Of a DNA stretch of 63,085 nt, positions 20,884 to 63,085 are shown in pieces. The stretch is from Mizuhopecten yessoensis (lineage: Eukaryota). The stretch spans positions 860,163 through 923,247 of the forward strand of contig NW_018408321.1 of the NCBI RefSeq assembly GCF_002113885.1. The letters are read 5' to 3'. The position numbers were made by a program, and so were the translations under genes. Position 1 is the stretch's first letter, and the number at the start of each line of letters is the position of its first letter. The notes under the pieces were generated by a model. The model did not search any database. It was not told the origin of the DNA and worked only from the letters and a program-made list of their open reading frames with translations.

Positions 20884-21420
20884 TTATGACGTCAATAATC
20901 GGTCAATGGCATCCATAGCTGATATGAATGCCTTCTGAATATGACATGGTGATATTGTGGCATTGCTATGTAATAGTAGATTAGTGTATGCCAACAGTCT
21001 GCTGTAAAATATTGCACCAAACTCAAAGATATTGCCATCCAGAAATGATATCATCCTATTTTCCACAAAATAAGCTACAAAATAGTTGCCAACCACATGC
21101 TTGTACCGCCCGTCCGCCTTTTTGGAGATAAGAAATAAAAGATATACGGAAATAGCGTAAAGGATGCTCCAGAATGTGCATTCTATCAAATCCATTTCTG
21201 GTGTATAGTGTCGTAATACAACTTTAACTGTAGTATGATGGCAATAAGTACGGTTCGGGTGGTTTGAAGTTTGGCCCCGGATATAATGGCTTGGATGTGC
21301 AAATATCAGTGCCAGCGATAACAGCTTAGTCTTGTGGAGTTTCGGAACCCAGTACAAAGCAGACAGTTCCACATCCTTATCATTAATCGTATTCTGAAAG
21401 GTTGTAATACAGAAGTATGA
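20884..21420 (-). mobile_element. Decayed Penelope-like RT fragment
   Basis: LYWVPKLHK (PLE RT LYWIPKLHK) and MISFLDGNIFEFG (MLEFLIDNIFVEFG), with internal deletions. Confidence 0.7.
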
Positions 21421-23068: not shown

Positions 23069-23357
23069 CTTAAGGATCACTGACTTAAGTCAATATTCTG
23101 AAAGCACTGCAGGTCTAGGTGTCTTGGAAACTCTCTTCTTTGGTACATCTCCCCTTCTTTATTGTAGTGTAATTTTAACAGTTTTAAACTTGTGGGATCA
23201 TATCGCTGATATCGCTGATATGATGTCAGACTGATATGTAAGACCTGTGTCAAAACTATGATAACTTCCAGACAACACTTTAACCGTTTTGATGAACAGT
23301 TGGAATCTTTGACAAAAACTTGGTGGGAACAGCAGGCACTTTCCCATTTTTAGCGTC

Positions 23358-29300: not shown

Positions 29301-31505
29301 AGCTATTTATTTGGTACATTAATACAGGAATATATCTACTGGGTATGATAATTATGCATCTAGAAAGTCACCAGCTTGAAACTGAATGCGCGAGTAAAGA
29401 TCACAACTTGTGTCATATTTCATTAAGCCTTGAATGTGTTGCAATCCAGCCAAAAACCAGATTAAAGGCAGTCCATAGCTAAATTTTCAATCTGCAACTG
29501 ATCAGACTCTTTATGAATTTCCATATGCTATATAATAATAACACTTCAGTAATTAACATTGTAGATATAAACTCTTAGCCTTGGTACACAAACACACAGA
29601 AGTAAAAGTATATAGCCAGGTACAGTAAATCTATAACAAACTTACCAGGTATTAAACGATGATCCTTCTTGAATTCTCGTTTTGGAGGCTCAGTTACCTG
29701 CCGTTCAAACTCCTCCTGCTCCTTACGTTTGGCCTTTAAGTTTAGCAGCTGTTTCTGAAGTCTGTCATTGTCTCTCTCAATGACACCAATCCTATTTATG
29801 ACAATGAAAATAACAAATATCAACTCAAAGTTTTCATTCAATTTGACATATCCGTTTTTAAAGAACCAACTGCTGTAAATTGTACTATCATTTATCATGC
29901 ATACATTTACAACAGGCTCATAGTCGTGGGCTTTAATGGTCACCTTAGTGAAATTATGAATGACATACAGTGTTGCTAGTTATATAGATTTAAATTGATT
30001 TGTAAAAGTTTGGTTATAAATACACCAGTTGCTTTCAAAGAAGTTTCAAAGCAGATATTTTTTGAAGGTTTTACATTTAGTGACCCTTATGGCTCTGTCT
30101 CTCAGCCTTTTTAGGATTCTTATATTCTTCCAGGGACTGATGATTACCACTAAGTTTTATAAATATCTGAAAGACACTTTCTAAATAGAAGAGAATAGTA
30201 TGTTTGTTTACATGACGATTGAAAGGCCTGACAAAAGACCTAAGGCGACCTAACGAATAGTATATACGTAAACTGTTATTTTAACAAAAGGCTGTACCCT
30301 AATAAGCATCATGTACCCTGCCCCAAGCTGACACAAGTTCAATGTCTCCAAACCCAAACTTATCAGTACATGTCAATAAATATATATTGTACTAATTTGT
30401 TTAAAAATGCTCTCAGTACAGTTGTAGACTAATCCCCTTCTTTCCAGCGCTGAACATATTAATATATGGGATATCTACCTTTCCTCTAGTTCATCGCCTC
30501 TCTTCTTGTAATTCCTCATGGTTGAGGGTTCGGAGGCCATGGCCTTGAGTTTGCCATGAAGGAAGATAGCCTCCCTCTGCCCTGACTTGATCACCTCAAT
30601 GGTGTCCTCATACTCTTTCTTCACCGCCGTCAACAGAGGTTTGTAGGCCTTCACATGCTCAATTATCTTTAAAAAAGAGTGTGCATAGATATAACTGCAT
30701 GGTAACATGTTCATGCTTATTTTTTGTCTTGAATTCCACAAATCACAGTAACTTTTTCATACTGGAGTAAATATGTATAAACTACACCATGTATTTGACT
30801 ATCAATAAACTCATTTGGACCAGATTGCATTGTATACCGTGTATATAAGTAAGATTATTAAAATAAACATGGTTACTCTAGGTAAGTAAAAATATGATAT
30901 AAGACATTACATAACTATAAACCATAATACATTGGACATACAGGTAGTTGAAAAAAACTATAAAAAAACTATATATATAAAAACACACATTTCATGTCCT
31001 AAGTTTTTTAGTGTTTGTCTTTACACCTTTCATACTGTCTTCCAACGGATTTGATACATTTTCAGCTGCAAAAGCATTATGTATTTTACAATTTACAGGC
31101 ATCAGGAGTCTTTATAGAATTTTGATGAAGTTATAACCACACTTCAAGGGGAAAACTTTGTATCTTTACAGTTTAAATGACGATTGAAACTTTTTAAATT
31201 TTTAGAATGTGGTTTGAAAGACAAATAACTTTATTCAACTTTCTTTTTATTTATAATTTACTCATAAGTTTCGTTCAGTGATTGTGATGACCTGGTTTAT
31301 TGGATGTGCTTCTTACCCTGTTAAAAACAGTCTTAAAGATGATATAACGCTGCTCATCTTCTTCAGTATTAATCCTTGACATCTCATAGTCAATGTACTC
31401 ACTGAGGTCCTGCAGGAAACGCCTGTCTACCTCATTTGTAATGATAGGCGGTATCTTGGTATATTTAGAAGTGGTAGAAGTGGGAGTTGAGGATCTACTT
31501 GACAT
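23358..31505 (-). CDS. CLHC1: Clathrin heavy chain linker domain-containing protein 1
   Basis: Exons 31505-31317, 30666-30479, 29791-29646, 29209-28877, 25455-25219, 24783-24609, 24348-23963, 23773-23358. All introns GT-AG and phase-consistent; 2070 nt, 689 aa. Motifs match CLHC1 as I recall it: [105 protein letters not shown]. Confidence 0.93.
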
Positions 31506-46301: not shown

Positions 46302-49300
46302 TCACAAAATCTGACATGACTTGGAGGTTTTTGTGTTGTTTGCTGTCTTTTCAATTTTTGGTTTATCTTGTACAGTGTGGGTTTCAGATTTTTCTGGTGT
46401 CAAGACTGTGTTGTTTTTGGATTCAGAGCTTCTTTGGGTTTCTGTGGTGGGACCTCCATTTGGTTTAGAATGGTCAGGTTCCACAGGCCCAGGTTTTGAA
46501 TGAACAGATTGTTCCTCTGTTACTTTGCTGGTCACAACATCTGTTGGTTTTGGAACTGTCTCTGTTGTTGTGACAGACTTATCCTCTGTTGGTTTTGAGA
46601 CAGTCCCTGTTGTGGCAGTTTTATCCTCTGTTGGTTTTGAGGCAGTCTCTGTTGTAGTCGAGTTTTCCTCTGTTGGTTTTGAGACTGTCCCTGTTGTGGC
46701 AGACTTATCCTCTGTTGGTTTAGAGACAGTCCCTGTTGTGGCAGTTTTATCCTCTGTTGGTTTTGAGTCAGTCCCTGTTGTGGCACTCTTATTCTCTGTT
46801 GGTTTTGAGACAGTGCCTGTTGTGGCAGACTTATCCTCTGTTGGTTTTGAGACAATCCCTGTAGTTGTGGCAGGGTTATTTCCTGTTGTTTCGGAGCCTT
46901 TTTGATTCTGTATTTCCTGACTAGACTGACCCTCCTTTGTCTCTAGGACTAATTCATTCACCTGTTATTAAAATGAAACTGACAATTGAAAATGCATGTT
47001 AACCTGAATTCAATACATTTAATGCTGAAACCAACATCATAAAATGACAACATTTTCAGTACCACAGTTTTATAAAATGGATGATATATATAATGGGTTT
47101 TTTATGACATTTACCATGCAGATTCATTTTCAAACGAAAGAAATAAAGATAAAATGATCACACAATATATTTATATTTTTTTCATAAATAAAGATTCATG
47201 TTAAAGACATAATGAAAAATATTAACAGACATTATTTTAAAAGAAACAATTAAGCTAGAAATAATAATCCATTCAATTTCTGTCGATCATTAACATCGCT
47301 TTTCCTGACTTCAAACAATCATTTACCCATATGACTTTAAAGAGAACCTGTGTATTTTTTTTCTTTTGTGCTTTTGTACATCAATATCTTAAAAAAAGGC
47401 CCATAGGGTCTGTATTGCTCACTTGGATATATAAGCAATCATTGAAAACATATTCTTATTAAAAGCAAGTCTCCAGAAGTGGAGCAAAATTGCAGGGCTG
47501 AATCCTGGTGTCATGATTGTAATAGTTTGTTCATGCACAGCAAGCACATCTATGGTTATAGGATGGGGATCACAACTGTTTTGACCTAAGTTATGACTCA
47601 AGGACTATTTAGACTCAAGGGTGGGGCTAATCCCTATAGCATGACTGTATTTGTATATGGTGATTGGATGGGGATCACAACTGTTTTGACCTAAGTTATG
47701 GCCCAAGGACTACTTAGACTCAAGGGTGGGGGGCTAATCCTGATAGCATGATTGTGTTTGTATATGGTTATTGGATGGGGATCTCAAACCCAGGGACTAA
47801 GTTCAAACATCAAGAGTAGGACCCTGAGGCCAATTCTGATAACATGATATTGTGTTTGTCTCTCCATGCCTATGAATGTCATGCATGTAAACTATATGGT
47901 TATGAGGGTAAAGATCATGACTTGTTTCTGTGATAATTTATGACCCTGGGACTTTTAGGTCCCCACAGACAGATCATAGTGTCAATCCTGGTAGAAAGAT
48001 TGTGTTTGTATCTTCAGGCCTGTTAAGCAGGTACCCTTCTATTTTTTTTATTGTCATCATCTAAGGATGCTTTCAACTTAATACAAGAGGCCCAAATGGC
48101 CTGTATCGCTCACCTGGATATCTAAGCAATCATGGCAAAATATTCCCCAAATGAGATCCAAGGGAATATGCCAGACCCCATGGCAAGGCCTATCCTTGTA
48201 GCATATCTGTATTGGATTTTTCATGGCCAGCAATTTTATGTATGGTTATGGGGTGGGGATCTCAACTGTTTCCAAGCTGTGACTCAGAAACAAGGTCCCT
48301 AGGGTTGTGGCCAGACCCAAGGATCAATTTTAATGTCATGACTGCATTCGTCTCTTTTTGCCCAGCATTTGTATTTATAGGTTTGGGGTGGGGATCTCAA
48401 CCGTTTCAAAGTTATGACCCAGGGGTTAAGTCTCCAAGGGTTGGGCCAGACCCTAGAGCCGTCCTGGAAGCAAGTGTGCATTCTTCTCTTTATACTCAGC
48501 AATTGTATATATGGTTATACGGTGGGGATCTCAACCATTTCCAAGTAATACACTTATTTTGGCCCCACCATTTGTACAATTTTGAATCCCTGCCTCCCAT
48601 AAATGCTTCCGACCAAATGTGATCGATATCCATGGCATAGTTCTGCAGAAGAAGTTGCTTAAAGCAATATAGACAAATTGCCCCCTTTTGGCCCCACCCC
48701 TCAGCCCCCTGGGGGGTCAGCCCCACTATTTGTACAATTTTAAAATCCCCACCACCTAGGGATTCTTCTAGTAAAATTTATTTAAATTCCAATCAATGGT
48801 TAAGAAGAAGAAGTCGTTTAAAGAAATTGTTGATGGATGGATGACGGACGACGGACGGACGCCACGGTATAGCATAAGCTCACCTTGGTCCTTCGGACCC
48901 GGGGAGCTAAAAAGAGTTCTTGTAGAATACCCAGAAATGTCATCTGAAACATTTGACAGATTGATGATGAATAATTGACTTGAGAATGGCAGGCTGTAGT
49001 ACGGTATAATTTCACCTTGGTACTTCAAACCAGGTGTGCTAAAAATACAAATTAATATACTTCCTTGGTCATTTGTGGGAAATATACATGCTTATATCAA
49101 AAGTACACATAAATGATAAAACAGTCATGGCCTGACATACATGTCACCACTAGTATACCTTCCTTCCTAGGTAGATCATTATAAAGATAATATAACTTCC
49201 TTCCTAGCTAGGTAGATCATAATAAAGATAGTATAACTTCCTTCCTAGGTAGATCATAATAAAAAGAGACAATGTTCATCACATTATATGTTAATAGAAC

Positions 49301-52300
49301 AGGGAAATATTTTAGCAAAAATGCTTCGGGATCAAAATCTCTTGGAAAATTCATATGATGAAAACAAAGGGTGAGGGATTAAGAAGAACTGAGGTAAGTA
49401 TTGTTTAAACCTAACAGGAGAGTGGGTAGCTTCCATGATATATAAGCTCTGATAGTTTTACTTGCCTTGATGAGATGTATGTCTGTGCTGTCTGTATCCT
49501 CCTGTAGCTCCTGTTTCACCTTAAGGAGGTTCAGAAGCATTGGTTCTGCCTGCTCTGATGCCTCCTCTTTATCTCTGAAAAAAAATCAGCAGAAACTTAA
49601 TTCAAATACCTTAGACGAAACCCAGATCTTCATACGCCTGTGAAATATCACAGGGGCACACAACTACTAAAACTATTGCATTTGTTAGACTTTCAGCTGG
49701 TGGATACGTACTATTCAGCGACTGAAAGTCTTACAAAAGCAATATTTTTAGTAGTTGCGTGCCCCTGTGGTAATCTATTTTTTAAGGTTAGTCCATTAAT
49801 CTATTGTTGAGAAATCATGACCACAAAGATTTGTAAAGAAGTTCTCTTTATTTTCATGTAATTTTGAGCTAATAAAACCTACATGGCACACCCATAGTGT
49901 AAATTTGATAAGTAATATATATTGGGAAAATTTGGTCCAGTCAAACTTTTGCCTTGCACCCATAAAATCTATTTTCGCTAATTGTTAATTTCATCCATCA
50001 CATTTGATTACATCTCTACTAATACTTATAATGTTGTTTACAAATGCCCGGTGTAGTGATAAATTAGCTCTCATTACAGAGAGCAAAAAGCTGAAAGTTT
50101 TACTGCAGCGAAAAACCTCCTGGTATATACTTAGTATCACTCTACTAGTCGGACAAATGGACAAACATGGACAAATCAATGCAATATGCCCACTTTTCAG
50201 CGTAAAATTATCAACAATCCTGTGAACCCTTAATCCAGTAAAATTATTGCCGTCAATATATGACCATGTTGTTCAGAACTTATTTCATCAGCTATATCAG
50301 TATAAGGTGCATACTGATCTTCAAGTATTGAAGTTTTGGGGTTGACTTATACCAAACACTCATTAATGACAAGAGGCCCAAGGGCCTTAGCGGTCACCTG
50401 AGTTATATTATAGGTACTGGTAGCTTTATTTTATTGTTTAGATGTGATGTGGAAATCAGCATGTAAACTAAGTGAAATACAATACTTGTCATGTCATCAA
50501 AGGATAAGAATTTGAAAATATTGGTAAATGTTCCCTTTGGGGCCCCACCCTAGCCCCTGGGGATGGGGCAGGAATCCCAATTTTACAAAGAAATACTCTC
50601 ATTCACCAAAGATGATTCTGACTAAGTTTGAGTAATTTTCTGCTGAAAATGGATGAAATATACCCAAAAGTGTTATTTCCCAATATAAACTATAGTAAAC
50701 TTTACCCCCTTCCCAAGGGAGAACAGATAGCTCAGGGGTCCTGAAATTTACAATTTAAGTAAAGCCCCTGATGATCTTTCTTTCCATGCAGAGAAAATGA
50801 CTGTAGACTAGTACCTCTGAGTCTTGAGAAGATTTTTTTTGATATATTGGTTAATTTTCCCTTTGGGGCCCCGCCCTGGCCCCTAGGGTTGGGGTAGGAA
50901 TTTAAATTTTACAATTTGAAACCATCTTCACCCAAGGATAATTCTCACCAAGTGAAAATAATTTCCTACAGAAAGTTGTCAGAATATACCCAAAAGTGTT
51001 ATTTCCCTATATAAACTATAGTAAACTTTACCCCCTCCCAAAGGGAGAACAAATAGCTCGGGGGTCCTGAAATTTACAATTTAAGTTAAGCCGCTGATGA
51101 TCTTTTTTTCCATGCAGAGAAAATGACTGTACCTCTGAGTCTGGAGAAGAAGATTTTGAAATATTGGTTAATTTTCCTTTGGGGCCCCACCCTGGCCCCA
51201 GCGGTTGGGGTAGGAATCCCAATTTTACAATTTTGTAGCCTCATATACCAAGGATGATTCTGACCAAGTTTGAAAATAATCCATCCACTGGTTCTTGAAA
51301 AGAAGTTGAAAATGTAAAAAGTTTACAGACGACAGACGTAAAGCGATTAGAATATGTCACTTGAGCAAAGCTCAGATGACCTAAAAATAGTCAATTTTCC
51401 CAGCTTCACTGCATGCTTTATCATTATCCAAAGTAAGTGACATCAGCTCAATCTACCAATTTTAAACTTACGTTCGTAATATTTCGTCCATCACATCATC
51501 TGCAACCTTGACCATAGCGAGATAATCGTTGTAGCTACAGGAGAAGGTCCCACTCATGTCAACCACCTTTGAAATGACATACTTCCTCATCTTGTCTGCT
51601 TTGTCACCACCCCTGTTTTTGACATAGTCATACCAAATTCTGTCCTTGAAATTTGCTGCCATGGGAAGAAGTTTCAGAAAGCTGTGTTCACCAGGCAGGT
51701 CCATAGTCTGGACAAAGTGTACAACACGTCTACCCTTCAGTAGTCGCTGGCGACAGAGAGCCAGGTGGAGATTCTGCATGTGTTCTTCTGAACTAACAAA
51801 CTCCTCTGATAGGAAGAGTACAATTGCACGAGCCGTGTCAATGTCTTGGAGAAGTGACTTGTTTCGTTCCCACAGAAATCTGACCTTCAGTTCGGGATGA
51901 AGGTTATCTAGTACATGGTTCAAAACCATGGCACAGTAAGTCGCATCACCAGCAAAGCCAATGGCCACATCACATTCTTGCTTGTCTTGGTCCTCAGGGC
52001 TGGCTTTCACTTCTGGCAGAGCACTTTTACGATAAATTGTGAAATCCTTTACGTGTAATTTGTAGTTGGTTGCCACATATCTGGTTCTTATCGTCTCGAA
52101 AATGTCTTTGTAGTTTACACCTTTTAATTCCTACAACAAATAAAATAAAATCTTATAAGTAATAATTACGTTATCATGCAAATTACCCAAAAATACTTTT
52201 TAGTACAATTTACCAGCAATGAAATTATCATCAGATAATTAGAATTTTAAGCAAGCGAGTACACCAGAAAACCCTACAAAATTATGTGAAGAAAATCAAT

Positions 52301-55300
52301 ACTACTGCTTTATACAGTAGTGGTAGCCATCTTTAAACTGACATTTGCATAAATATCTTCCTATATTTACAACTTACCTTCTCCAACACATTGAAGTGCC
52401 CCTTTTCTCCAGTTTGAAGCCAGTTTATAACCATCTTTAAGATAAAATCCACAGCACCAGCAAAGTTGTCTCCCCTACCATCCACCATGTCGACTTTACA
52501 GAATCCTGCATGGGGGGTTGACGACAGATCTTCTATACAAACTGGTAAAAACAGGATCTTAGTTGGCTGCAATAACAAATAAAATCATGTCAGTGTATTA
52601 CAGGAGTAACAGAACGGATAAAATTAACTTCAAATTGTTTGGTAATTTATAAGACTCTATAAGATCAAGTTCACACATGTTAAAAGCAATCACATTCTTG
52701 TAGTTAAGTTAATATTACTTGTGGATGAAGGCAGAACCGACTTGTATGAAGATCACTGGATCATTATGTAAAATACATTGACAACCAGGTTTAATATGGT
52801 GCTAAATGCTAATGTCTGACCCTGCCATGAAAATCTTGTTTCGATAATTTCCTTGTCCCGGCCAAATGACAGTGCTGCTTGGTCTGACCTCTATCTTTCA
52901 ACCTGTCTGGGTTGGGTGACCCTACCAGGAGCACAAAGCCCCAACCAGCATAGCTATCAAGGTCATTGAGGTACTCACCCCTCACCATGGACAGCGATTA
53001 GGGGGATGTTGATATATAAGATGTTTATAGTTTATTCCCAAAACTAGTTACCATTGTAACAATTGGACTTGTTGAAGGGTACAGTTTTTTGGACTTGTTG
53101 AAGGGTACAGTTTTTTGAACTTATTGAAGGATACAGTTAATTGGACTTGTTGAAGGATACAGTTTTTTGGACTTGTTGAAGGGTACAGTTTTTTGAACTT
53201 ATTGAAGGATACAGTTTATTGGACTTGTTGAAGGATACATTTTTTTGAACTTATTGAAGGATACAGTTTATTCACAAAACTATATAACAATTGGACTTGT
53301 TGAAGGATCTTAAGTCAGAGTTTTAGATATAATATTAATTTGATTTCTATAGACAACAGAATCTTCAAGTGTGATAGAAACTCAATTTTTATGTTTCAAG
53401 TCATTTAGATCAACCAATGGAAATGCTGAAACAGTGAAAATCAACTACCCAATTTTCCCTTTACCAATAGTGATTACGTGATGTCACAAAAATGAAATTA
53501 GAGTTGTGAAAACGTTGTGTTAGGAACCTACATCAATGAGATGTCGCAGTAGGGCGATGTTGTACTCCTCCTGACAAATCAGAGAAGATACATAGGTCTG
53601 GGACACGAGGGCAATAACGCACCGCGCCCCATCCACCGAATCATACAGGGTCTTCTGCCACATACTCCCTGAGGAAAGAATAGACCCATACACATTAGAA
53701 TAGGCATGTGTCACATACTTACAATAATATACTTACAGAGAGGTAGAATATCTCAATATAGGACATACACAAAATATGCAATAACAGGTAAGAAATACTG
53801 TGAAATATTTTCTAAGAACTATGAAACACTGGTAACACTGATAGCCCCCATCCTATTCCCAGCCTACCATTCCTGATAAAATGGTGGAGCATATAAAACA
53901 AACATTTCTATTTCATATAAAGGTCAAGGTCACCATAAATATCAGATTCTATCAGAGAATCCTTAGACGGACGATCGTCTGTTATCAGAGAGGACTTACA
54001 TTTGTAACTATATATATTGGTTTTTATGAGAAGCAATGTAAATAATTCATTTCCAAAAGAATTTCTTATGATTTCTTTTCCAGAAAACAATGGCCAAGAT
54101 TTGTCAGATACCTCAACCAACTGAACAACAAGCACACAATGACTTCAGCTATTGTAAATTGAACAATATATAAACAACAAGCTCACAATGACGTCAGCTT
54201 TGGTAAACTGAACAATATATAAATAACAAGCACACAATCACTTTAGCTATTGTAAATTGAACAATATATAAACAACAAGCTCACAATGACGTCAGCTTTG
54301 GTAAACTGAACAATATATAAATAACAAGCACACAATCACTTTAGCTATTGTAAATTGAACAATATATAAACAACAAGCTCACAATGACGTCAGCTTTGGT
54401 AAACTGAACAATATATAAATAACAAGCACACAATCACTTTAGCTATTGTAAATTGAACAATATATAAACAACCACCACCCAATGACTTCAGCTATTGTAA
54501 ACTGAACAATAAATAAACAACCACCACACAATGACTTCAGCTATTGTAAACTGAACAAGATATAAACAACAAGCACACAATGACTTCAGCTACTGTAAAC
54601 TGAACAATATATAAACAACCACCACACAATGACTACAGCTATTGTAAACTGAACAATATATAAATAACAAGCACACAATCACTTTAGCTATTGTAAATTG
54701 AACAATATATAAACAACCACCACCCAATGACTTCAGCTATTGTAAACTGAACAATAAATAAACAACCACCACACAATGACTTCAGCTATTGTAAATTGAA
54801 CAATATATAAACAACAAGCTCACAATGACGTCAGCTTTGGTAAACTGAACAATATATAAATAACAAGCACACAATCACTTTAGCTATTGTAAATTGAACA
54901 ATATATAAACAACCACCACCCAATGACTTCAGCTATTGTAAACTGAACAAGATATAAACAACAAGCACACAATGACTTCAGCTTTTGTAAACTGAACAAT
55001 ATATAAACAACACGCACACAATGACTTCAGCTATTGTAAATTGAACAATATATAAACAACCACCACCCAATGACTTCAGCTATTGTAAACTGAACAATAT
55101 ATAAACAACACGCACACAATGACTTCAGCTATTGTAAACTGAACAATATGTAAACAACAAACAATAGGCAAATCTATTATAATAGTCATACAAAATTCCC
55201 ATTTTATTTCTTTAGTCTTGTTTGAACAGTTTTTATCTAATACAGGTACTTTTTGTCTGGTACCATGGTAAGTTGTACACTACTGACTAGTGAGTGTACA

Positions 55301-58300
55301 GTTCTGTAACATATTCTCCTTACCCATGGTCAGTTCACTTCGGTCGTAGAAGATCTTAGGTTCAGGTTTGGCCCCTAACAGCTCCTTTAGTAAATCTCCA
55401 GCCTGGTCAGGGTTTTTGTGCGAGTAGGAAATAAAGATGTCGTACTGCTTGGTCCTAGCAGGGCCAGGTAGGTCCAGGATATTGTTCTTGACTTCGTCCA
55501 TCTCTTCCTCTTGGCCAGACAACCTCTCAACTAACATGGAACAGGCATCCTGGATCTTGGTTTCTATACTGTCAGCTTCTTTACGCACTCTGTGAGGGAG
55601 ATTTGACATGTTGATATTTTTCTTCAGAAAACCTTAGGTTATCGGGTTATCTCTATATACATTCAGCAAGTACTACGTATGGCAAAATAACACTGGTAAA
55701 AATAGATAGAGAAGGGAGATAACTCACCGACAATCTTGGTACTGAACTAGAGTGATGTAGACAGGCATGGATTCCACTGTTAGAACATAGAAAGGCTGCA
55801 GAATGTTCCCCTTCCTCAAACGGTTACAGCACATAGCCATGTTAAACTGCTCTAAACACTCCGAGCTGTTCACAAACAGTGGGGTCAGCACAACAATGAT
55901 TCTACAAATAAAAACAAGAGTATAGCAAATGGAACATTTATTTCAACAATCTCAACTCTTAAGCAACTTTTCAACATTGAAGTATCACTCAGAGGTTTTC
56001 TTTAACAAAGTTGTAACACAGCTATTTACCTATCTAAGTTTCACTACATTCATATATTAATACCTTAATTGTCATTTGCTAATGATACTGGAATGCAACA
56101 TCTATCTATAATAATTAAGTGGATGAAGTGTATTTTTAAAAAGAACTTCAGTCAGAAAGCAAAAACCAAGTTATCAGGTGTAATGATCAGTAGCATACAT
56201 ATGCCCTGAATTTATGCAATTTGCACAAATATAAAGAGACTTCTGTTATTTGAACTTTCACCTCCCGTTCTGACCTTGTTCTTAGAGTGGGCCCCAGCAA
56301 CTCTGTCTGTAAATGATGTTTCTCACTTTCAAACATTGTATGATAATTCTTCGTATAAACAAAAGGAACAGTAAAAACTTGTACAATTTGTACTTAACGA
56401 GAGATGTGTGTAAGGTGAATGTGCAATACTCGGTCTATAAGTGGTCGAAATGAAATAATTAAGTTAACAAAGGTCACAGATGTTAAGGTTAAAGGTGGAG
56501 GCAAAAAGAAATGCTATGAAACTTATTTTTTGTTACTTAACCAAACTACCCATAAACTGGTAAATACAGACACAGAGCTGAATTTGCTTCCAAGGAATTT
56601 GGCCAAACTCAAGAGAATAATGCATGGCAAATCAACAGGTATATGTGTCCATGATAAAGAGAAGTAAAATAATCTACAGTAACAATGAAGTGTAAGTTAA
56701 ATAATTACTTCAAACATGAGGACATTTTCTGAAAGATTTGATCTTGCCACACTTCATCCTCCTTAAATATTTGTACATCAGCGCAAATCTTTATATCAGA
56801 TTTCTTCTTCCTGAGAGTTTTCTCAATTTTCTTACACCAATGTTTATCCGCATCTTGGAACATGATGAAAATATCAAATGTCTGTAGGTTTAGACTTTTT
56901 TCCTTCAAAAATATAAAAACGTTTTTTTTAGAATGTTATTAGGATTATGAAAATGTAACAGGAGACTGATTAATTGAATCTTTGTTATTCACAGTTTTTT
57001 TTAGTACTATGATAGATTCTTAGTAAAGATTATTCTGAATTTTTCTAAAATAAGACTGTATAATCTACCATTGAAATACCTGTAACCCTCAAGAAAACTA
57101 TGAATCCTATTACCAGGTCTATCATTGGAGTACCAACCTCAAGAAAACTACCCATCATCCTGCAAAATCTGCCATTTGAGTACCACCCTAAAGAAAATTA
57201 TGAATCATACTGCCAAATCTACCATTGAAATACCACCCTCAAGAAAACTATGCATCATACTACCAAATCTACCATTGAAATACCACCCTCAAGAAGACTA
57301 TGAATCATATTGCCAAATCTACAATTGAAATACCACCCTCAAGAAAACTATGCATCATACTACCAAATCTACCATTGAAATACCACCCTCAAGAAAACTA
57401 TGCATCATACTACCAAATCTACCATTGAAATACCACCCTCAAGAAAACTATGCATCATACTACCAAATCTACCATTGAAATACCACCCTCAAGAAGACTA
57501 TGAATCATATTGCCAAATCTACAATTGAAATACCACCCTCAAGAAAACTATGCATCATACTACCAAATCTACCATTGAAATACCACCCTCAAGAAAACTA
57601 TGCATCATACTACCAAATCTACCATTGAAATACCACCCTCAAGAAGACTATGAATCATATTGCCAAATCTACAATTGAAATACCACCCTCAAGAAAACTA
57701 TGCATCATACTACCAAATCTACCATTGAAATACCACCCTCAAGAAAACTATGCATCATACTACCAAATCTACCATTGAAATACCACCCTCAAGAAGACTA
57801 TGAATCATATTGCCAAATCTACAATTGAAATACCACCCTCAAGAAAACTATGCATCATACTACCAAATCTACCATTGAAATACCACCCTCAAGAAAACTA
57901 TGCATCATACTACCAAATCTACCATTGAAATACCACCCTCAAGAAAACTATGCATCATACTACCAAATCTACCATTGAAATACCACCCTCAAGAAAACTA
58001 TGCATCATACTACCAAATCTACCATTGAAATACCACCCTCAAGAAAACTATGCATCATACTACCAAATCTACCATTGAAATACCACCCTCAAGATAACTT
58101 TGCATCATACTACCAAATATACCATTGAAATACCACTCTCAAGAAGATTATGAATCATATTGCAAAATCTACAATTGAAATACCACCCTCAAGAAAACTA
58201 TGCATCATACTACCAAATTGATCATTGAAATACCACCCTCAAGAAGAGTATGAATCATATTGCCAAATCTACAATTGAAATACCACCCTCAAGAAAACTA

Positions 58301-61300
58301 TGCATCATACTACCAAATATACCATTGAAATACCACCCTCAAGATAACTATGCATCATACTACCAAATCAACCATTGAAATACCAGCCTCAAGATAACTA
58401 TGCATCATACTACCAAATCTACCATTGAAATACCACCCTCAAGATAACTATGCATCCTACTGCCCAATCTACCACATGAGTACATGTACTATCCTTAAAT
58501 TCATTACACATCATAGTTCTACATCTTCTATTGGAATACCACCCTTAAATTAACAGTGCATAATAAAACAAATCTACCAATTAGATATCACTTTCAAGAA
58601 AATGTATCAAACAACCAGATCTATATCTAGAATATCACCCTCAAGTAAACTTTACCATTATTTACAGGTACTTAATAATAATGCTTCAATGCATACCATT
58701 AGTGTTACATGAAATCATTACATATAGGCATTTGGATATGTTTTACTAGATATTTACCATTCTCTTTTTACTTAATTTTGTATAAGTATCCTTTATTTTG
58801 GAGAAAATCTCAGACATGGATTTGTTTTGTGAACCATAGATGACAATCTTGAAGCACTTGAGTGGCAGACCTGCCATAATCCATTGAGCAGCACAGTGAA
58901 GCATGACTGACAGCACATGCTCAGGACTTTTATTCTGAAATCAAGGGAGAGTAACGCAGAAGGTGAGTTTGGACCAAGCACGTCAAATCAATCTTATCTC
59001 AGTACTATGTATACAAACATAAGGTAATCAAATACTAAAAATCAATCGTATCTCAGTATTATATATATACAAACATAAGGTAATCAAATACTAAAAATCA
59101 ATCTTATCTCAGTACTATGTATACAAACATAAGGTAATCAAATACTAAAAATAAATCGTATCTCAGTATTATATATATACAAACATAAGGTTATCAAATA
59201 CTAAAAATCAATCTTATCTCAGTACTATACATACAAACATAAGGTAATCAAATACTAAAATACAAACATAAGGTTATCAAATACTAAAAAACATTATAAT
59301 CTCAGTAATATATATACAAACATAAGGTTATCAAATACTAAAAACCAAACTTATCTCAGTATTATATACAAACATAAGGTAATCAAATACTAACAAGAGT
59401 ATATACTGCGGGGCGGATCAATATATGCCCGTCGAATGTCATATAGTGTTATATACTTTCTTACATTGAAATAAGATCTACAACATTCTAAGAGTGGTTA
59501 GCTGACATGCTATAAAAAATGTATGAGAAAATCCCCGGACAAATAATCAAATACTGAAATGAACAAAGGGCAATAACTTTTGCAATAATCGTCAAATCAA
59601 AATTCTTTTAAGGGAGACTTAACTTCATATCATGATTATAATTTATACCAAGTTTCAAAGAGATCCGTTGAAATATCTAGGAGGAGATTGCCGGACAAAA
59701 AATCAAATACTGAAATGAACAAAGGGCAATAACTTTTAGAAAAATTGTTGAATCAAAATTCTTTCAATGGAGACACAACTTCATATCATGATTATAATGT
59801 ATAATAAGCTTCAAAGAGATCCGTTAAAAAATGTAGGAACTGGGTGCAAATTTTGTGGGATCAAATATATTTTTATGGGACAAGTATGAGGGTCACCACG
59901 ATACGGGTGATTATACCCACACAGACAGAGCTGGAACTGCCTGATGGCCGTCGTAAAGTAGGTCACCACGATACGGGTGATTATACCCACACAGACAGAG
60001 CTGGAACTGCCTGATGGCCGTCGTAAAGTAGGTCACCACGATACGGGTGATTATACCCACACAGACAGAGCTGGAACTGCCTGATGGCCGTCGTAAAGTA
60101 GGTCACCACGATACGGGTGATTATACCCACACAGACAGAGCTGGAACTGCCTGATGGCCGTCGTAAAGTAGGTCACCACGATACGGGTGATTATACCCAC
60201 ACAGACAGAGCTGGAACTGCCTGATGGCCGTCGTAAAGTAGGTCACCACGATACGGGTGATTATACCCACACAGACAGAGCTGGAACTGCCTGATGGCCG
60301 TCGTAAAGTAGGTCACCACGATACGGGTGATTATACCCACACAGACAGAGCTGGAACTGCCTGATGGCCGTCGTAAAGTAGGTCACCACGATACGGGTGA
60401 TTATACCCACACAGACAGAGCTGGAACTGCCTGATGGCCGTCGTAAAGTAGGTCACCACGATACGGGTGATTATACCCACACAGACAGAGCTGGAACTGC
60501 CTGATGGCCGTCGTAAAGTAGGTCACCACGATACGGGTGATTATACCCACACAGACAGAGCTGGAACTGCCTGATGGCCGTCGTAAAGTAGGTCACCACG
60601 ATACGGGTGATTATACCCACACAGACGGAGCTGGAACTGCCTGATGGCCGTCGTAAAGTAGGTCACCACGATACGGGTGATTTTACCCACACAGACAGAG
60701 CTGGAACTGCCTGATGGCCGTCGTAAAGTAGGTCACCACGATACGGGTGATTATACCCACACAGACAGAGCTGGAACCGCCTGATGATTTCATTGATAGC
60801 ATTAGGGCATATTAAGGTCAGAGAAACCAGTGGCCGTCGTAAAGTAGGTCACTAGGGTACTCAATAAATACCTGATGGCCTGTGGCAAGTAGTGGTGTGA
60901 TTACTGTAGTCTCTTTGTTGTTGAATACTGGTACAAACACACGAAACATCTGACGGATATCTTCTACTATTGTGCAATCTCCCCTCGTTCTGTAATAACA
61001 AACATTTATCATTTACTTTCACTTATCAACTTAATTCAAAAGTAACAACTTGGTTTTATTTTCTTATTGGAGGTGGGAATTCATTTTTGAACTAGAAGTT
61101 ATTATTACAAGTATTGAAACTTCTAGTTTTAAGTACATATATATATGTATTTTATGTCATAAACACACAATAAATGAGACCATAAGATATTTTACTGTCA
61201 AATATCTCATTTAAAATAATCTAAGAAAACTTTATATGATTTTGACATAGCAAAGGACTTCACCACATATAGTTGAGGGTTGCGCTATTACCTTTCAAAA

Positions 61301-61466
61301 CAGAGAAGTCGTTTGTAGGGAAGGTGTCCCTCCAAGGGCTGTGAAAGCCAGCAGTGGAATTGTCTTCTCAAGTCTAACTCCATAGACCTACTCAATTGAT
61401 GCACATTCATACCCAGTTCAGTCTTCAGTGCCCCGATTACCGTTCCTCTCATTGGAGCATAGTCAC
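46302..61466 (-). CDS. Macrodomain-like + 3x TIR domain protein with Thr-rich repeat stalk and C-terminal CaaX motif (5' end lies beyond the window)
   Basis: Phase-consistent exon chain on the minus strand: 61466-61292, 60989-60872, 58934-58758, 56902-56709, 55901-55728, 55589-55324, 53668-53532, 52566-52378, 52130-51472, 49574-49466 (GC donor), 46961-46302. Total 2858 nt, about 952 aa, no internal stops. TIR hallmarks: FDIFIMF..WQDQIFQKMSSCLKIIVVLTPLFVNSSECLEQFNMA; YDIFISYSHKN..KIFYDRSELTMGSMWQKTLYDSVDGARCVIALVSQTYVSSLICQEEYNIA; CDVAIGFA..DTARAIVLFLSEEFVSSEEHMQNLHLA. Macro-like motif TTVITPLLATGHQ..AAQWIMAGLPLKCFKIVIY. Ends SKSCQIL*. Confidence 0.88.
46540..46875 (-). repeat. Coding 42-bp (14-aa, KPTEDKSATTGTVS) tandem repeat, about 7 copies, in the last exon of the Macro-TIR gene
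   Basis: In frame within ORF 46302-46961. Confidence 0.9.
47391..49045 (+). mobile_element. Non-autonomous HINE/pearl-type element (outer copy) with an inner copy nested at 48083-48913
   Basis: Both copies start with (AC)AAGAGGCCC..GCCTGTAT(C/T)GCTCAC(C/T)TGGATAT-like sequence. Both end with a 3' stem-loop (GCTCACCTTGGTCCTTCGGACCCGGGGAGCTAAAA; TTCACCTTGGTACTTCAAACCAGGTGTGCTAAAAA). A GACG microsatellite precedes the inner 3' end; internal tandem core repeats are present. Confidence 0.7.
50369..51387 (+). mobile_element. HINE/pearl-type element with roughly 320-bp internal tandem repeats
   Basis: 5' ACAAGAGGCCCAAGGGCCTT..GGTCACCTGAG; about 2.5 core units starting near 50531, 50858 and 51174; GAC microsatellite; 3' hairpin GTCACTTGAGCAAAGCTCAGATGAC followed by AAAAA. 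Confidence 0.72.
51480..51978 (-). other. TIR domain 3 (divergent, catalytic Glu replaced by Asn)
   Basis: CDVAIGFA, LQDIDTARAIVLFLSEEFVSSEEHMQNLHLALCR, VVHFVQ. Asn codon at 51773-51771. Confidence 0.7.
53062..53310. repeat. 26-bp minisatellite (intronic)
   Basis: GGACTTGTTGAAGGGTACAGTTTTTT units. Confidence 0.9.
54110..55160. repeat. 49-bp satellite, about 21 copies, with alternating variants (intronic)
   Basis: AAACAACAAGCACACAATGACTTCAGCTATTGTAAATTGAACAATATAT units at 54172, 54221, 54270 and onward. Confidence 0.95.
55525..56880 (-). other. TIR domain 1 (catalytic Glu replaced by Gln)
   Basis: FDIFIMF (betaA), W..QIFQKM, IIVVLTPLFVNSSECLEQF (betaC-alphaC), ILQPFYV (betaD), LVQYQDCR (betaE). 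Codon CAG (Q) at 55849-55847. Confidence 0.75.
57060..58480. repeat. 50-bp satellite, about 27 copies (intronic)
   Basis: TACCACCCTCAAGAAAACTATGCATCATACTACCAAATCTACCATTGAAA; a variant unit recurs at 57281, 57481, 57631 and 57781. Confidence 0.96.
58985..59392. repeat. Roughly 55-bp minisatellite (intronic)
   Basis: ATCAATCTTATCTCAGTACTATGTATACAAACATAAGGTAATCAAATACTAAAA units. Confidence 0.9.
59393..59840 (+). mobile_element. Truncated HINE-type element (3' end missing) with a roughly 155-bp internal duplication
   Basis: Starts ACAAGAG..GCGGGGCGG..GCCCGTC; duplicated core CCGGACAAA..AATACTGAAATGAACAAAGGGCAATAACTTTT; ends abruptly before the 70-bp array. Confidence 0.55.
59891..60786. repeat. 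Near-perfect 70-bp tandem array, 12.8 copies (intronic)
   Basis: GGTCACCACGATACGGGTGATTATACCCACACAGACAGAGCTGGAACTGCCTGATGGCCGTCGTAAAGTA at 59891+70n; only three substitutions seen, all in the last three units. Confidence 0.97.
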
Positions 61467-61599: not shown

Positions 61600-63085
61600 A
61601 ATGGGCTCTGATGGAGATGGGGTGTAATCAGTGTGATATAACTGTGTAACAATGGGATCAGAGGGAGAAAGTAGCACAAGAATGGGACCAAAGAGACATA
61701 TTAGTGCTACATGGGATCAGAGGGATATATGTGGTAACAATAGAATCAGTGGGATATAACAGTGTAAAAAAAAGATCAGAAGGAGATAGTAGCTCAAAAA
61801 TTGGATCAAAGGAAGATATACTTTTGTAATAATATGATCAAAGGGAGATAGTAGTGAAAAAATGGGATCAGATGGAAATAGTGTAGTAACAATGGGAACA
61901 GAGAAAAATAATATTACAGCTATGGGATCAGACAGAGACAGTAAAGTAACAATGGTATCAGATGGAGACAGTAGAGTAACAATGGGATCAGAGGGAGACA
62001 GTACAGTAACAATGGGATTAGACGGAGACAGTAAAGTAACAATGGGATCAGATGGAGACAGTAGAGTAACAATGGGATCAGAGGGATACAGTAAAGTAAC
62101 AATGGGATCAGAGGGAGACAATAGAGTAACAATGGGATCAGATGGAGATAGTAGCTCAAAAATTGGATCAAAGGAAGATATACTTTTGTAATAATGTGAT
62201 CAAAGGGAAATAGTAGTGAAAAAATGGGATCCGATGGAAATAGTGTTGTAACAATGGGAACAGAGAAAAATAATATTACAGCTATGGGATCAGAATGAGA
62301 CAGTAAAGTAACAATGGTATCAGATGGAGACAGTAGAGAAACAATGGGATCAGGGGGAGACAGTAGAGTAACAATGGGATCAGAGGGATACAGTAAAGTA
62401 ACAATGGGATCAGAGGGAGACAGTAGAGTAACAATGGGATCAGAGGGAGACAGTAGAGTAACAAAAGGATCAGATGGAAACAGTATAGTAACAATGGGAT
62501 CAGAGGGAGACAGTAGAGTAACAATGGGATCAGAGGGATACAGTATAGTAAAAATGGGATCAGAGGGAGACAGTAGAGTAACAATGGGATCAGAGGGAGA
62601 CAGTAGAGTAACAATGGGATCAGATGGAGACAGTATAGTAACAAAGGGATCAGAGGGTGACAGTGGAGTAACAATAGGATCAGATGGAGACAGTAGAGTA
62701 ACAATGGGATCAGAGGGAGACAGTAGAGTAACAATAGGATCAGAGGGATACAGTAGACTAACAATGGGATCAGAGGCAGACAATAGAGTAACAATGGGAT
62801 CAGAGGGATACAGTAGAGTAACAATGGGATCAGAGGCAGACAGTAAAGTAACAATTGGATCAGAGTGATACAGTAGAGTAGCAATGGGATCAGAGTGATA
62901 CAGTAAATTAACAATGGGATCAGAGGGATACAGTAAAGTAACAATGGGATCAGATGAAGACAGTAGAGTAACAATGGGATCAGAGGGATACAGTAGACTA
63001 ACAATGGGATCAAAGGGTGATGGTAGTGTAACAATTGCATCAGAGGGAGACAGTAGAGTAACAATGGGATCAGAGGGAGACAGTA
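61600..63085. repeat. 30-bp minisatellite with a roughly 360-bp higher-order duplication (intronic, runs off the window)
   Basis: ACAATGGGATCAGAGGGAGACAGTAGAGTA units; the block starting GATAGTAGCTCAAAAATTGG occurs at about 61786 and 62147. Confidence 0.95.

What the first reader, a model, noticed from the sequence alone, without database searches (positions are those of the whole stretch)
46302..61466. Candidate new innate-immune module: single-chain macrodomain + TIR x3 + prenylated stalk
Seen in sequence: 11 phase-consistent exons encode a macro-like domain followed by three TIRs and a CaaX tail, with no LRR, transmembrane, death or SAM domain in the visible part. Two of the three macro exons appear in the ORF track in the wrong frame or not at all. 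Established: TIR domains with the conserved Glu cleave NAD+ into ADPR-derived signals (SARM1, plant TNL, Thoeris ThsB); macrodomains bind or hydrolyse ADPR; in type II Thoeris a macrodomain effector (ThsA) reads the TIR product His-ADPR. Inference: this protein joins an ADPR-signal reader or eraser to a TIR writer in one membrane-tethered animal protein. It could sense ADP-ribosylation or ADPR and trigger NADase activity, or act as a self-limiting circuit. I know of no characterised animal protein with this architecture.
Basis: partly seen in the sequence, partly recalled or inferred. Interest (0 to 1): 0.9.

Follow-up and report, generated by a model that had tools for sequence, protein, structure and literature searches.

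The report
Scallop macrodomain, triple-TIR, lipid-anchored gene
This is a real, expressed, single-copy scallop gene for a protein with an ADP-ribose-type macrodomain, three TIR immune-signalling domains and a lipid-anchor tail; it is conserved from placozoans to sea urchins, clearly related to a bacterial two-domain protein, and nobody has tested its function.

Summary
The minus strand carries 11 coding exons (46302-61466), and a twelfth, the first, lies beyond the window. Together they encode the 997-aa RefSeq protein "uncharacterized LOC110459200" of Mizuhopecten yessoensis. RNA contigs from several studies splice the last macro exon onto the first TIR exon.

- **Macrodomain:** residues 1-200 miss Pfam Macro but model confidently (pLDDT 93). 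They match solved macrodomains (PARP9 macro 2 Z 17, macroH2A1.1 Z 16).
- **TIR domains:** Pfam finds three. Only TIR2 keeps the catalytic Glu here (Q/E/N). Family-wide, TIR1 is mostly Gln and TIR2 always Glu.
- **Tail:** 27 of 42 relatives end in a Cys-x-aliphatic-Leu/Ile box, so geranylgeranylation is likely.
- **Copy number and range:** the gene is single-copy here. It occurs in Placozoa, Cnidaria, echinoderms, hemichordates, molluscs, brachiopods, nemerteans and flatworms.

The new result is that macro+TIR1 aligns end to end with a stand-alone prokaryotic Macro-TIR protein (38% identity, E 1e-74). I found that protein in 55 bacterial and archaeal genomes.

The function is inferred, not shown. 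My best reading is a membrane-tethered TIR enzyme that cleaves NAD+ under macrodomain control. I rate it a new variant of a known kind.

The parts
61292..61466 (-). Coding exon 2 (aa 46-104): macrodomain loop 1 and helix 1 (SAFPGDY...GTVIGAL), strands CWLS and LLCFE. The first coding exon lies outside the window at L002:2809-2944.
   Evidence: Exact match to P0091; AG acceptor and GT donor.
60872..60989 (-). Coding exon 3 (aa 105-143): macrodomain helix and loop 2 (TVITPLLATGHQ).
   Evidence: Exact match to P0091; splice sites; a profile aligns this stretch to the PAIGTGN loop of PARP14/15 macrodomains.
58758..58934 (-). Coding exon 4 (aa 144-202): C-terminal helix-strand-helix of the macrodomain.
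   Evidence: Exact match; the RNA contig overhang beyond 56903 maps uniquely to 58759-58788.
56709..56902 (-). Coding exon 5 (aa 203-267): first half of TIR1.
   Evidence: Pfam TIR_2 on the exon; RNA joint 55901|56709 in three runs.
55728..55901 (-). Coding exon 6 (aa 268-325): second half of TIR1, with CLEQF (Gln at the catalytic-Glu position) and the VQYQDCR motif shared with prokaryotic Macro-TIR proteins.
55324..55589 (-). Coding exon 7 (aa 326-414): helical linker, disordered stretch 353-371, start of TIR2 (YDIFISYSH).
   Evidence: RNA joint 55589|55728 in four runs; low pLDDT for 353-371.
53532..53668 (-). Coding exon 8 (aa 415-459): core of TIR2 with SSLICQEEY, which holds the retained catalytic Glu (E448).
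   Evidence: Pfam TIR_2 E 4e-7 on the exon alone; Glu column; aligned to WCKYEL of TLR2; RNA overhang maps to 53645-53667.
52378..52566 (-). Coding exon 9 (aa 460-522): end of TIR2 and a helix.
   Evidence: Exact match to P0091; splice sites.
51472..52130 (-). Coding exon 10 (aa 523-742): linker and the whole of TIR3, a divergent TIR with extra strands; HMQNL puts Asn at the catalytic position.
   Evidence: Pfam TIR_2; 82 relatives found with this exon; column analysis; AlphaFold2 model.
49466..49574 (-). Coding exon 11 (aa 743-778): acidic helical segment that opens the tail; GC-AG intron follows.
46302..46961 (-). Coding exon 12 (aa 779-997 plus TGA): Thr/Lys/Glu/Ser-rich disordered stalk with 7 copies of a 14-aa repeat (42-bp repeat at 46540-46862), a Lys-rich stretch and the terminal CQIL box.
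   Evidence: conservation of the box in 27 of 42 relatives.

Best explanation
This is the scallop member of an old, mostly single-copy animal gene family. Its product is a cytosolic protein held on a membrane by a C-terminal geranylgeranyl group at the end of a disordered stalk of about 250 residues.

Shown here:
- the gene model and its splicing;
- the macro fold;
- three TIR domains;
- the pattern at the catalytic-Glu position;
- the conserved CaaX-type end;
- the full-length relationship of macro+TIR1 to a stand-alone prokaryotic Macro-TIR protein.

Inferred mechanism:
- The macrodomain binds an ADP-ribose-containing ligand. That could be free ADPR, NAD+ or a derivative, or an ADP-ribosylated protein.
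- Binding switches the TIR module on or off.
- TIR2 cleaves or cyclises NAD+. In most species TIR3 would do so as well.
- TIR1 has lost the Glu in nearly all animals but kept the rest of the domain. It would serve as a built-in, non-catalytic partner in the TIR-TIR packing that TIR enzymes need for an active site.
- The output would be local NAD+ loss or a nucleotide signal made at the membrane.

Whether the macrodomain only reads or also hydrolyses its ligand is open.
For: - **Gene and transcript:**
- **Macro fold:** pLDDT 93.3, pTM 0.90. Foldseek E 1e-9 to 1e-7 to macroH2A1.1, YmdB, PARP9/14/15, Af1521 and MacroD2. VIA-align Z 17.0 to PARP9 macro 2 crystallised with NAD+. The only PDB profile hits are macrodomains, aligned at GDIT and at the PAIGTGN loop. 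Prokaryotic relatives give weak full-length NCBIfam hits to O-acetyl-ADP-ribose deacetylase.
- **Conserved pocket-type residues:** G25 D26, S42 A43 F44, D47 Y48, D77, W85 S87, C101 E103, R120, G141 Q143 and K172 are kept in at least 85% of both 27 animal and 63 prokaryotic sequences.
- **TIR domains:** TIR_2 E 1.4e-32 with three stretches.
- **Catalytic column:** all 13 prokaryotic TIRs have Glu. All 37 animal TIR2 domains that align there have Glu (one further model is truncated). TIR1 is Gln in most.
- **Lipid anchor:** 27 of 42 relatives end S-x-S/A/T-C-x-[ILVFC]-[LI], including nemertean and echinoderm members, often after Lys/Arg-rich stretches.
- **Descent from a prokaryotic unit:** P0130 aligns over 355 residues with the brittle-star protein (38% identity, E 1e-74) and with the scallop protein (33%, E 2e-63). 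There are 55 loci in bacterial and archaeal genomes.
- **Folding of the whole protein:** all four domains fold in one model, pLDDT 82.5, pTM 0.62.
- **Published background:** diverse animal TIRs with this Glu make cADPR when expressed in bacteria (bioRxiv 10.64898/2026.04.20.719644).
Against: - There is no biochemical evidence of any kind.
- Pfam Macro, ThsA_Macro and all PADLOC macro models miss the N-terminal domain. The Gly-rich loop 1 of classical ADPR-binding macrodomains is replaced by SAFPGDY...GT, so the ligand may not be ADPR.
- A Glu at the catalytic position does not guarantee activity. TLR2 has it and is inactive (preprint above).
- The best sequence matches of TIR2 among solved structures are adaptor or receptor TIRs: TLR2, TLR15, TIRAP and SIGIRR.
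- In this scallop only one of the three TIRs keeps the Glu.
- A fold test of TIR1 with TIR2 gave no answer.
- Single copy and a tree that follows the species tree are unusual for an invertebrate immune effector.
- The prokaryotic relatives have no conserved neighbour gene and no PADLOC system assignment, so their role in defence is itself unproven.
Confidence: 0.45

Rival explanations
1. It is a non-enzymatic, lipid-anchored TIR adaptor or scaffold. The protein would sit at the membrane beside Toll-like or IL-1-like receptors and bridge TIR-TIR contacts, as TIRAP (lipid-binding) and TRAM (myristoylated) do in vertebrates. The macrodomain would dock it to ADP-ribosylated partners.
For: - The best solved-structure sequence matches of TIR2 and of the prokaryotic TIR are TLR2/15, MyD88, TIRAP and SIGIRR.
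- TIR1 lacks the catalytic Glu in most species, and TIR3 lacks it in scallops.
- Membrane tethering by a lipid is a known feature of sorting adaptors (my own knowledge).
- Three TIRs give several docking surfaces.
Against: - The catalytic Glu of TIR2 is present in all 37 animal members that align there and in all 13 prokaryotic relatives sampled. That is hard to explain without catalysis.
- The ancestral prokaryotic unit exists in organisms that have no TLR pathway.
Confidence: 0.2
2. It is a self-limiting writer-eraser. The TIR module makes an ADPR-derived product or ADP-ribosylates a target, and the macrodomain hydrolyses that product or mark. The signal would then stay short-lived and local.
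For: - Many macrodomains are hydrolases, and structural matches include YmdB, MacroD2 and Af1521.
- There are weak NCBIfam hits to O-acetyl-ADP-ribose deacetylase and to ADP-ribosylglutamate hydrolase.
- An invariant polar set (D47, Y48, D77, C101, E103, R120, K172) could be an active site.
Against: - By motif alignment, the Asn and Asp that MacroD-type enzymes use fall on Ser42 and a hydrophobic residue. This was read by eye and is not a structural superposition.
- The top structural matches are reader-type macrodomains: PARP9 macro 2, macroH2A1.1 and PARP14 macro 2.
Confidence: 0.15
3. It is a conserved metabolic or cell-death regulator rather than an immune protein. It would be an NAD+-sensing switch comparable in logic to SARM1, with the macrodomain taking the place of the ARM domain as the nucleotide sensor.
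For: - The gene is single-copy in this genome.
- It has about one copy in most species sampled, and its tree follows the species tree from cnidarians to bivalves.
- RNA contigs hold it in runs from several studies without any known challenge.
Against: - Nothing ties it to neurons or to injury.
- Abalones carry tandem paralogues, which suggests some lineage-specific diversification.
- TIR enzymes outside SARM1 are mostly linked to defence.
Confidence: 0.15

Closest known systems
Prokaryotic stand-alone Macro-TIR proteins (about 340 aa; e.g. P0130, and loci in Coleofasciculus, Nostoc, Nitrosomonas, Thauera, Nitrobacter, Chitinophagaceae, Methanotrichaceae and a Loki archaeon)
   Same: They are collinear, full-length homologues of macro+TIR1: 33-38% identity over about 350 residues, E 1e-63 to 1e-74. 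They share the motifs GD(I/L)T, VSAFP.DY, CWLS, LCFE, G.GDQG, S..C..E and (V/L)QY.DCR.
   Different: They have one TIR, which always keeps the catalytic Glu, and no stalk or CaaX box. They have no conserved neighbour gene and no experimental characterisation that I could find.
Reader-type macrodomains: PARP9 macro 2, macroH2A1.1, PARP14 macro 2/3
   Same: The fold is the same (Z 15.6-17.0, rmsd 2.6-3.3 over 173-182 residues). The Asp of GDIT and the T-G-N loop 2 are kept.
   Different: Sequence identity is only 9-18%. The Pfam Macro model is not matched. Loop 1 lacks the Gly-rich stretch. The partner domains differ: TIR here, PARP catalytic or histone domains there.
Type II Thoeris (ThsB TIR plus ThsA macro effector)
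   Same: A TIR and a macrodomain work in one pathway.
   Different: In Thoeris they are two proteins and the macro protein is the membrane effector; here it is one chain. ThsA macro is a weaker structural match (Z 12.2-13.1). ThsA_Macro is not hit by Pfam, and ThsB_TIR scores below its cut-off (13-15 bits against 21.2).
SARM1 / TIR-1
   Same: An animal TIR enzyme whose NAD+ cleavage is gated by a nucleotide-binding regulatory domain in the same chain.
   Different: SARM1 has ARM and SAM domains, forms an octamer through SAM, has one TIR and no lipid anchor. None of those domains is present here. SARM1 is a weak sequence match (E about 1e-3 for the prokaryotic profile).
Lipid-targeted TIR adaptors TIRAP and TRAM
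   Same: A cytosolic TIR protein placed on a membrane by a lipid-related signal. TIRAP is among the best sequence matches.
   Different: They have a single TIR without a catalytic role, no macrodomain, and an N-terminal lipid signal instead of a C-terminal CaaX box.

Membership tests
Macrodomain superfamily | Three-layer alpha/beta/alpha fold with a central mixed sheet that superposes on solved macrodomains | tested here: met
   AlphaFold2 pLDDT 93.3, pTM 0.90. Foldseek probability 1.00, TM 0.58-0.75. VIA-align Z 13-17 over 165-186 residues.
Macrodomain superfamily | Match to Pfam Macro (PF01661) above its gathering score | tested here: not met
   No Pfam hit on residues 1-205 of the scallop, Pecten or eight other members, nor on the prokaryotic relatives. 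The link is by structure and by weak profile hits only.
Macrodomain superfamily | ADP-ribose contact motifs: Asp after strand 2, Gly-rich loop 1, and loop 2 of the type S/G-T-G-x-x-G | tested here: inconclusive
   Asp26 of GDIT is invariant, and loop 2 (ATGHQ; consensus ATGNQG) is kept. Loop 1 reads SAFPGDY...GT instead of NAAN...GGG. There was no superposition with a ligand.
Macrodomain superfamily | Binding of ADP-ribose or a derivative | not testable with these tools
   Needs ITC or thermal shift with purified domain.
MacroD-type ADP-ribosyl hydrolases | Catalytic Asn in NAAN and Asp in G-V-D-G-A-I-H | tested here: inconclusive
   By motif alignment these fall on Ser42 and Ile56. The alignment was made by eye, not by structural superposition.
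TIR domain family | Match to Pfam TIR_2/TIR above the gathering score | tested here: met
   P0091: TIR_2 E 1.4e-32, 113 bits against cut-off 28, three stretches; TIR 57.8 bits against 21.3.
TIR NAD+-cleaving enzymes | Glu in helix C at the position of the S-x-W-C-x-x-E motif | tested here: met
   This holds for TIR2 only (E448 in SSLICQEEY, aligned to WCKYEL of TLR2). TIR1 has Gln and TIR3 has Asn in this scallop.
TIR NAD+-cleaving enzymes | Measured NAD+ cleavage that depends on that Glu | not testable with these tools
   Needs an enzyme assay. The Lottia relative's TIR2 is listed but marked as not tested in a 2026 survey.
CaaX-prenylated proteins (geranylgeranyl type) | Cys at the fourth position from the end, aliphatic residue at the second-last, Leu (or Ile/Phe) last | tested here: met
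   The protein ends CQIL, and 27 of 42 relatives end C-x-[ILVFC]-[LI]. The third-last residue is Gln here, which is not aliphatic.
CaaX-prenylated proteins (geranylgeranyl type) | Actual lipid attachment and membrane localisation | not testable with these tools
   Needs metabolic labelling or imaging of a Cys mutant.
Thoeris components | Match to ThsB_TIR (PF08937), ThsA_Macro (PF20016) or PADLOC Thoeris models at family level | tested here: not met
   ThsB_TIR scores 13.3 bits against cut-off 21.2. There is no ThsA_Macro hit. PADLOC gives only weak generic TIR hits.
SARM1 family | ARM repeats and tandem SAM domains before the TIR | tested here: not met
   Pfam finds no ARM or SAM.
ecTIR-DC families of Gerdol et al. 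2017 | Assignment to one of the numbered conserved invertebrate TIR families | not testable with these tools
   The paper is not held. Papers that cite it do not describe the families. The wide invertebrate range and the absence of vertebrate hits fit that concept.

The most novel reading that the evidence does not exclude
Animals from placozoans to echinoderms keep a prokaryote-derived, macrodomain-gated TIR enzyme as a membrane-anchored generator of an ADPR-type second messenger. The macrodomain would sense a nucleotide or an ADP-ribosylated target. The Gln-bearing TIR1 would be a dedicated pseudo-enzyme partner that completes the active site of TIR2 within one chain. This would be a one-chain animal counterpart of Thoeris-like signalling, and a pathway that vertebrates, insects and nematodes have lost.
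Probability: 0.25. Interest if true: 0.85.

Novelty: new variant of a known kind. Interest (0 to 1): 0.62.

Why it matters
TIR domains are now known to be enzymes in bacteria and plants, and recent preprints report the same for animals. How animal TIR enzymes are switched on is known for SARM1 only.

This family offers a second, very different regulatory design: a macrodomain in the same chain, a built-in inactive TIR, and a lipid anchor. A prokaryotic relative is close enough to study side by side.

Because the gene is single-copy and conserved across at least eight animal phyla, one set of experiments would speak for much of invertebrate biology. Those experiments are ligand binding, NAD+ products, localisation and knock-down in an oyster, scallop, sea urchin or coral.

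It also adds a clear case to the list of animal immune-type modules that share ancestry with prokaryotic conflict genes.

Tried and rejected
- **Pfam on single exons** gave only weak TIR hits and nothing for the macro exons. Exon-sized pieces are too short.
- **Pfam, PADLOC and NCBIfam on the N-terminal domain** gave no family.
As the tool advised, I laid the part beside it. The exon 4-5 junction therefore rests on the contig overhang, not on a listed joint. Junctions 1-2, 2-3, 3-4 and 8-12 were not tested with reads.
- **The look-up of sequencing runs** labelled the runs 'RNA?' only. Their contigs skip introns at GT-AG, which is why I treat them as RNA.
- **Complex prediction** of TIR1 with TIR2 gave 'no answer' (score 0.01). 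This is no evidence either way.
- **Conserved operon partner** of the prokaryotic Macro-TIR gene: only antisense shadow ORFs and synteny within Chitinophagaceae turned up. Flanking genes in nine loci are unrelated to one another.
- **Literature:** Gerdol et al. 2017 is not held. Searches for 'three TIR domains', 'Macro-TIR' and similar terms, and for the locus names, found nothing relevant.
- **Rejected: artefact of gene prediction that fuses two genes.** RNA contigs cross the macro-TIR boundary, and the same order of domains is found in bacteria in a single ORF.
- **Rejected: transmembrane receptor.** There is no hydrophobic segment.
- All whole-protein work used the database protein P0091 by reference.

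Full report
**Where and what.** The window is G000:C4994:860163-923247 of a 987.6-Mb assembly in 82,659 contigs. The gene lies on the minus strand. Stop-to-stop frames gave ten candidate exons. Taken singly, they gave only weak Pfam TIR hits and nothing for the putative macro exons.

**Finding the full protein.**
- A search of 1.84 billion representative proteins with the largest exon (51471-52130) found 82 relatives. Among them is a 986-aa Pecten maximus protein, P0001, with three TIR stretches.
- tblastn of P0001 against the window and the 20 kb upstream gave twelve collinear exon matches at 60-89% identity. The weakest are the tail exons (48-69%).
- The first of them is at L002:2807-2944. 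That is outside the window, behind a 2300-N gap that I did not touch.
- A later search returned P0091, NCBI 'uncharacterized protein LOC110459200 [Mizuhopecten yessoensis]', 997 aa, from a contig of exactly the window's contig length. Every residue of P0091 maps onto these exons.

**Gene model.** With the splice dinucleotides the CDS parts are:

| Exon | Window coordinates | Note |
|---|---|---|
| 1 | about 65894-66029 | outside the window |
| 2 | 61466-61292 | |
| 3 | 60989-60872 | |
| 4 | 58934-58758 | |
| 5 | 56902-56709 | |
| 6 | 55901-55728 | |
| 7 | 55589-55324 | |
| 8 | 53668-53532 | |
| 9 | 52566-52378 | |
| 10 | 52130-51472 | |
| 11 | 49574-49466 | GC donor |
| 12 | 46961-46302 | includes the TGA stop |

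The parts sum to 2991 nt, which is 997 codons. All whole-protein analyses used P0091 or P0001 by reference.

**Transcripts.**
- Twenty runs from nine studies hold exon 10.
- On 55290-57095, contigs of four studies cover exons 5, 6 and 7 and skip the introns at 55589|55728 and 55901|56709. The skipped parts end CT..AC on the plus strand, which is GT..AG on the gene's strand.
- The overhang beyond 56903 matches 58759-58788 and nothing else in the window. That is the 3' end of macro exon 4. The overhang before 55323 matches 53645-53667, which is exon 8.
- One contig of 1333 letters continues 684 letters upstream of exon 5. That is enough for exons 4 to 1, but only 30 letters of the overhang are printed.

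So transcripts do join macro and TIR exons. The other junctions rest on the RefSeq model, the splice sites and orthologues.

**N-terminal domain.**
- Fifteen relatives align over about 205 residues with invariant G25-D26-I27-T28, W85, C101, E103, R120 and W161.
- A profile of this alignment hits only macrodomains in the PDB (PARP14 and PARP15). The hits are weak (E 0.2-0.3) but collinear at GDIT and at the P-A-I-G-T-G-N loop.
- AlphaFold2 gives pLDDT 93.3 and pTM 0.90.
- Foldseek finds more than 200 matches at E below 0.001. They are led by macroH2A1.1, YmdB, PARP9/14/15, Af1521 and MacroD2.
- VIA-align gives Z 17.0 to PARP9 macro 2 with NAD+, 15.9 to macroH2A1.1, 15.7 to PARP14 macro 1-2, 15.1 to Af1521 and 12.2-13.1 to ThsA macro.

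The fold is a macrodomain beyond reasonable doubt. The sequence family lies outside Pfam Macro.

**TIR domains.**
- P0091 scores TIR_2 E 1.4e-32 with three stretches.
- I cut all TIRs of 38 animal and 13 prokaryotic members with a family profile and read the column of the catalytic Glu. The register was fixed by the alignment of SSLVCQEEY to SEWCKYEL of TLR2 and by the one invariant Glu of the prokaryotic set.
- All 13 prokaryotic TIRs have Glu. All 37 animal TIR2 domains that align there have Glu; one further model is truncated.
- TIR1 has Gln in most members, occasionally Leu, Met or Lys, and Glu in four.
- TIR3 has Glu in most lineages but Asn in the three scallops.

The residue before it, which is Glu in all three domains of some species, varies in prokaryotes and is not the catalytic one.

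**Tail.**
- Residues 743-997 are 21% Thr, 12% Lys, 11% Glu and 11% Ser. They hold seven 14-residue repeats encoded by a 42-bp tandem repeat.
- The repeat unit differs even between scallop genera, so only length and composition seem to matter.
- The last four residues are CQIL.
- Of 42 relatives, 27 end S-x-S/A/T-C-x-[ILVFC]-[LI]. These include a nemertean and sea urchins, and the box often follows Lys/Arg-rich stretches. Most of the others look like truncated models.
- A last residue of Leu points to geranylgeranyl transferase I (established knowledge). Attachment itself is untested.
- No transmembrane segment exists.

**Whole protein.** AlphaFold2 on residues 1-745 with 34 relatives gives pLDDT 82.5 and pTM 0.62. 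Only 353-371 fall below 50. All four domains fold. TIR3 carries extra strands before and after the core. A two-chain test of TIR1 with TIR2 gave no answer.

**Range and copy number.**
- The macro profile finds only the four exons of this gene in the whole genome.
- Relatives occur in bivalves, gastropods, a chiton, octopus, Lingula, Lineus, Macrostomum, echinoderms, hemichordates, corals and Trichoplax. No vertebrate, arthropod or nematode hit appeared.
- The search tool's length window leaves proteins of 360-410 aa unexamined.
- Abalones have tandem paralogues.

**Prokaryotic relatives.**
- The macro profile also found proteins of about 340 aa in metagenomes, with the same domain followed by one TIR.
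- One lies on a 29.5-kb contig among a porin and pentose-phosphate genes, next to a TIR-STAND gene.
- A scan of one genome per species found 55 loci in Cyanobacteriota, Pseudomonadota, Bacteroidota, Chloroflexota, Actinomycetota, Planctomycetota, Acidobacteriota, Gemmatimonadota, Verrucomicrobiota, Methanotrichaceae and a Promethearchaeota bin.
- P0130 aligns end to end with macro+TIR1 of a brittle star (38% identity over 355 residues, E 1e-74) and of the scallop (33%, E 2e-63). The alignment includes the (V/L)QY.DCR motif at the end of the TIR.
- The prokaryotic TIR is about equally close to animal TIR1 and TIR2 and more distant from TIR3. That fits a triplication of the TIR in the animal stem.
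- In a tree of 90 macrodomains the 27 animal sequences form one side of a branch (SH-aLRT 100). Their order is corals, then hemichordate and echinoderms, then lophotrochozoans, with gastropods and bivalves apart. The prokaryotic side mixes phyla.
- The tree is unrooted and was built with the quick method. A single old event is supported. Transfer from prokaryotes to animals is only the more economical reading.
- No neighbour gene is conserved across phyla. PADLOC and NCBIfam recognise only the TIR part generically.
- Residues kept in at least 85% of both animal and prokaryotic macrodomains form a polar set typical of a pocket: D26, S42, D47, Y48, D77, S87, C101, E103, R120, Q143 and K172.

**Literature.**
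- I found no paper that uses Macro-TIR or similar terms, and none that names the loci.
- A 2026 preprint shows that many animal TIRs with the catalytic Glu make cADPR when expressed in bacteria. Its tables list the Lottia member's second TIR (V4A2X4_2, Glu), marked as not tested.
- Another 2026 preprint notes whole clades of unstudied animal TIRs.
- The 2017 catalogue of conserved invertebrate TIR families is not held. From memory I expect this family to be one of them, described without the macrodomain, but I could not check this.

- **Best reading (about 0.45):** a lipid-anchored TIR enzyme gated by its macrodomain, with TIR2 as the catalytic unit and TIR1 as a non-catalytic partner.
- **Rivals:** an adaptor without catalysis (0.2), a writer-eraser pair (0.15), and a non-immune NAD+ switch (0.15).

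I class it as a new variant of a known kind. It is a TIR protein with a regulatory nucleotide-type domain, in an architecture and with an ancestry that I did not find described.

Noticed in passing
window 57062-58474, 59891-60786, 54124-55160: Three introns of the gene hold long minisatellites: 50 bp x 28 copies, 70 bp x 12.8 copies at 99% identity, and 49 bp x 21 copies. They produce runs of spurious ORFs in the ORF list and blocked one read-laying request.
   Followed up: partly
window 61646-63085, continuing to about L002:2720: A 30-bp satellite (48 or more copies, 80% matches) fills the start of intron 1 on both sides of a 2300-N assembly gap. It reads as long open frames on both strands (PSDPIVTLL... 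and GSEGDSRVTM...), which are not genes.
   Followed up: partly
window 49464-49465: The intron after coding exon 11 starts GC (GCAAGT), a GC-AG intron. All other introns of the gene are GT-AG.
   Followed up: yes
window 46540-46862: The 42-bp coding repeat of the stalk (14 aa, 7.6 copies) has a different unit in Pecten maximus (KPETQTEQA type). The stalk repeats therefore turn over quickly while the CQIL end is kept.
   Followed up: partly
window 56091-56544: Short low-depth RNA-run contigs lie inside intron 5 (56091-56469 in X1, 56413-56544 in X3). They may be unspliced precursor, a repeat transcript or DNA carry-over.
   Followed up: no
window 55418, 55547, 56768: The RNA contigs differ from the assembly at a few exon positions. 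For example, 55418 G>A appears in all four runs. This is probably allelic variation.
   Followed up: no
window 20884-29943, minus strand: Several ORFs of 120-160 aa (for example 23358-23738, 23880-24359, 28752-29183) have no Pfam match. They may be exons of another gene upstream of the finding.
   Followed up: partly
L004:11047-13878: In one bacterial contig the Macro-TIR gene lies tail to tail with a 943-aa TIR_2 / NB-ARC-like / TPR protein. In Nitrobacter vulgaris (L027:2446-7686) the neighbour is a 1746-aa CHAT / TPR-S protein. Both are conflict-system types, but neither is conserved across loci.
   Followed up: partly
Haliotis rubra contig of 3,657,377 bases (P0011, P0152, P0165): Abalones carry at least three paralogues of the family on one contig, unlike the single copy in the scallop.
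   Followed up: no
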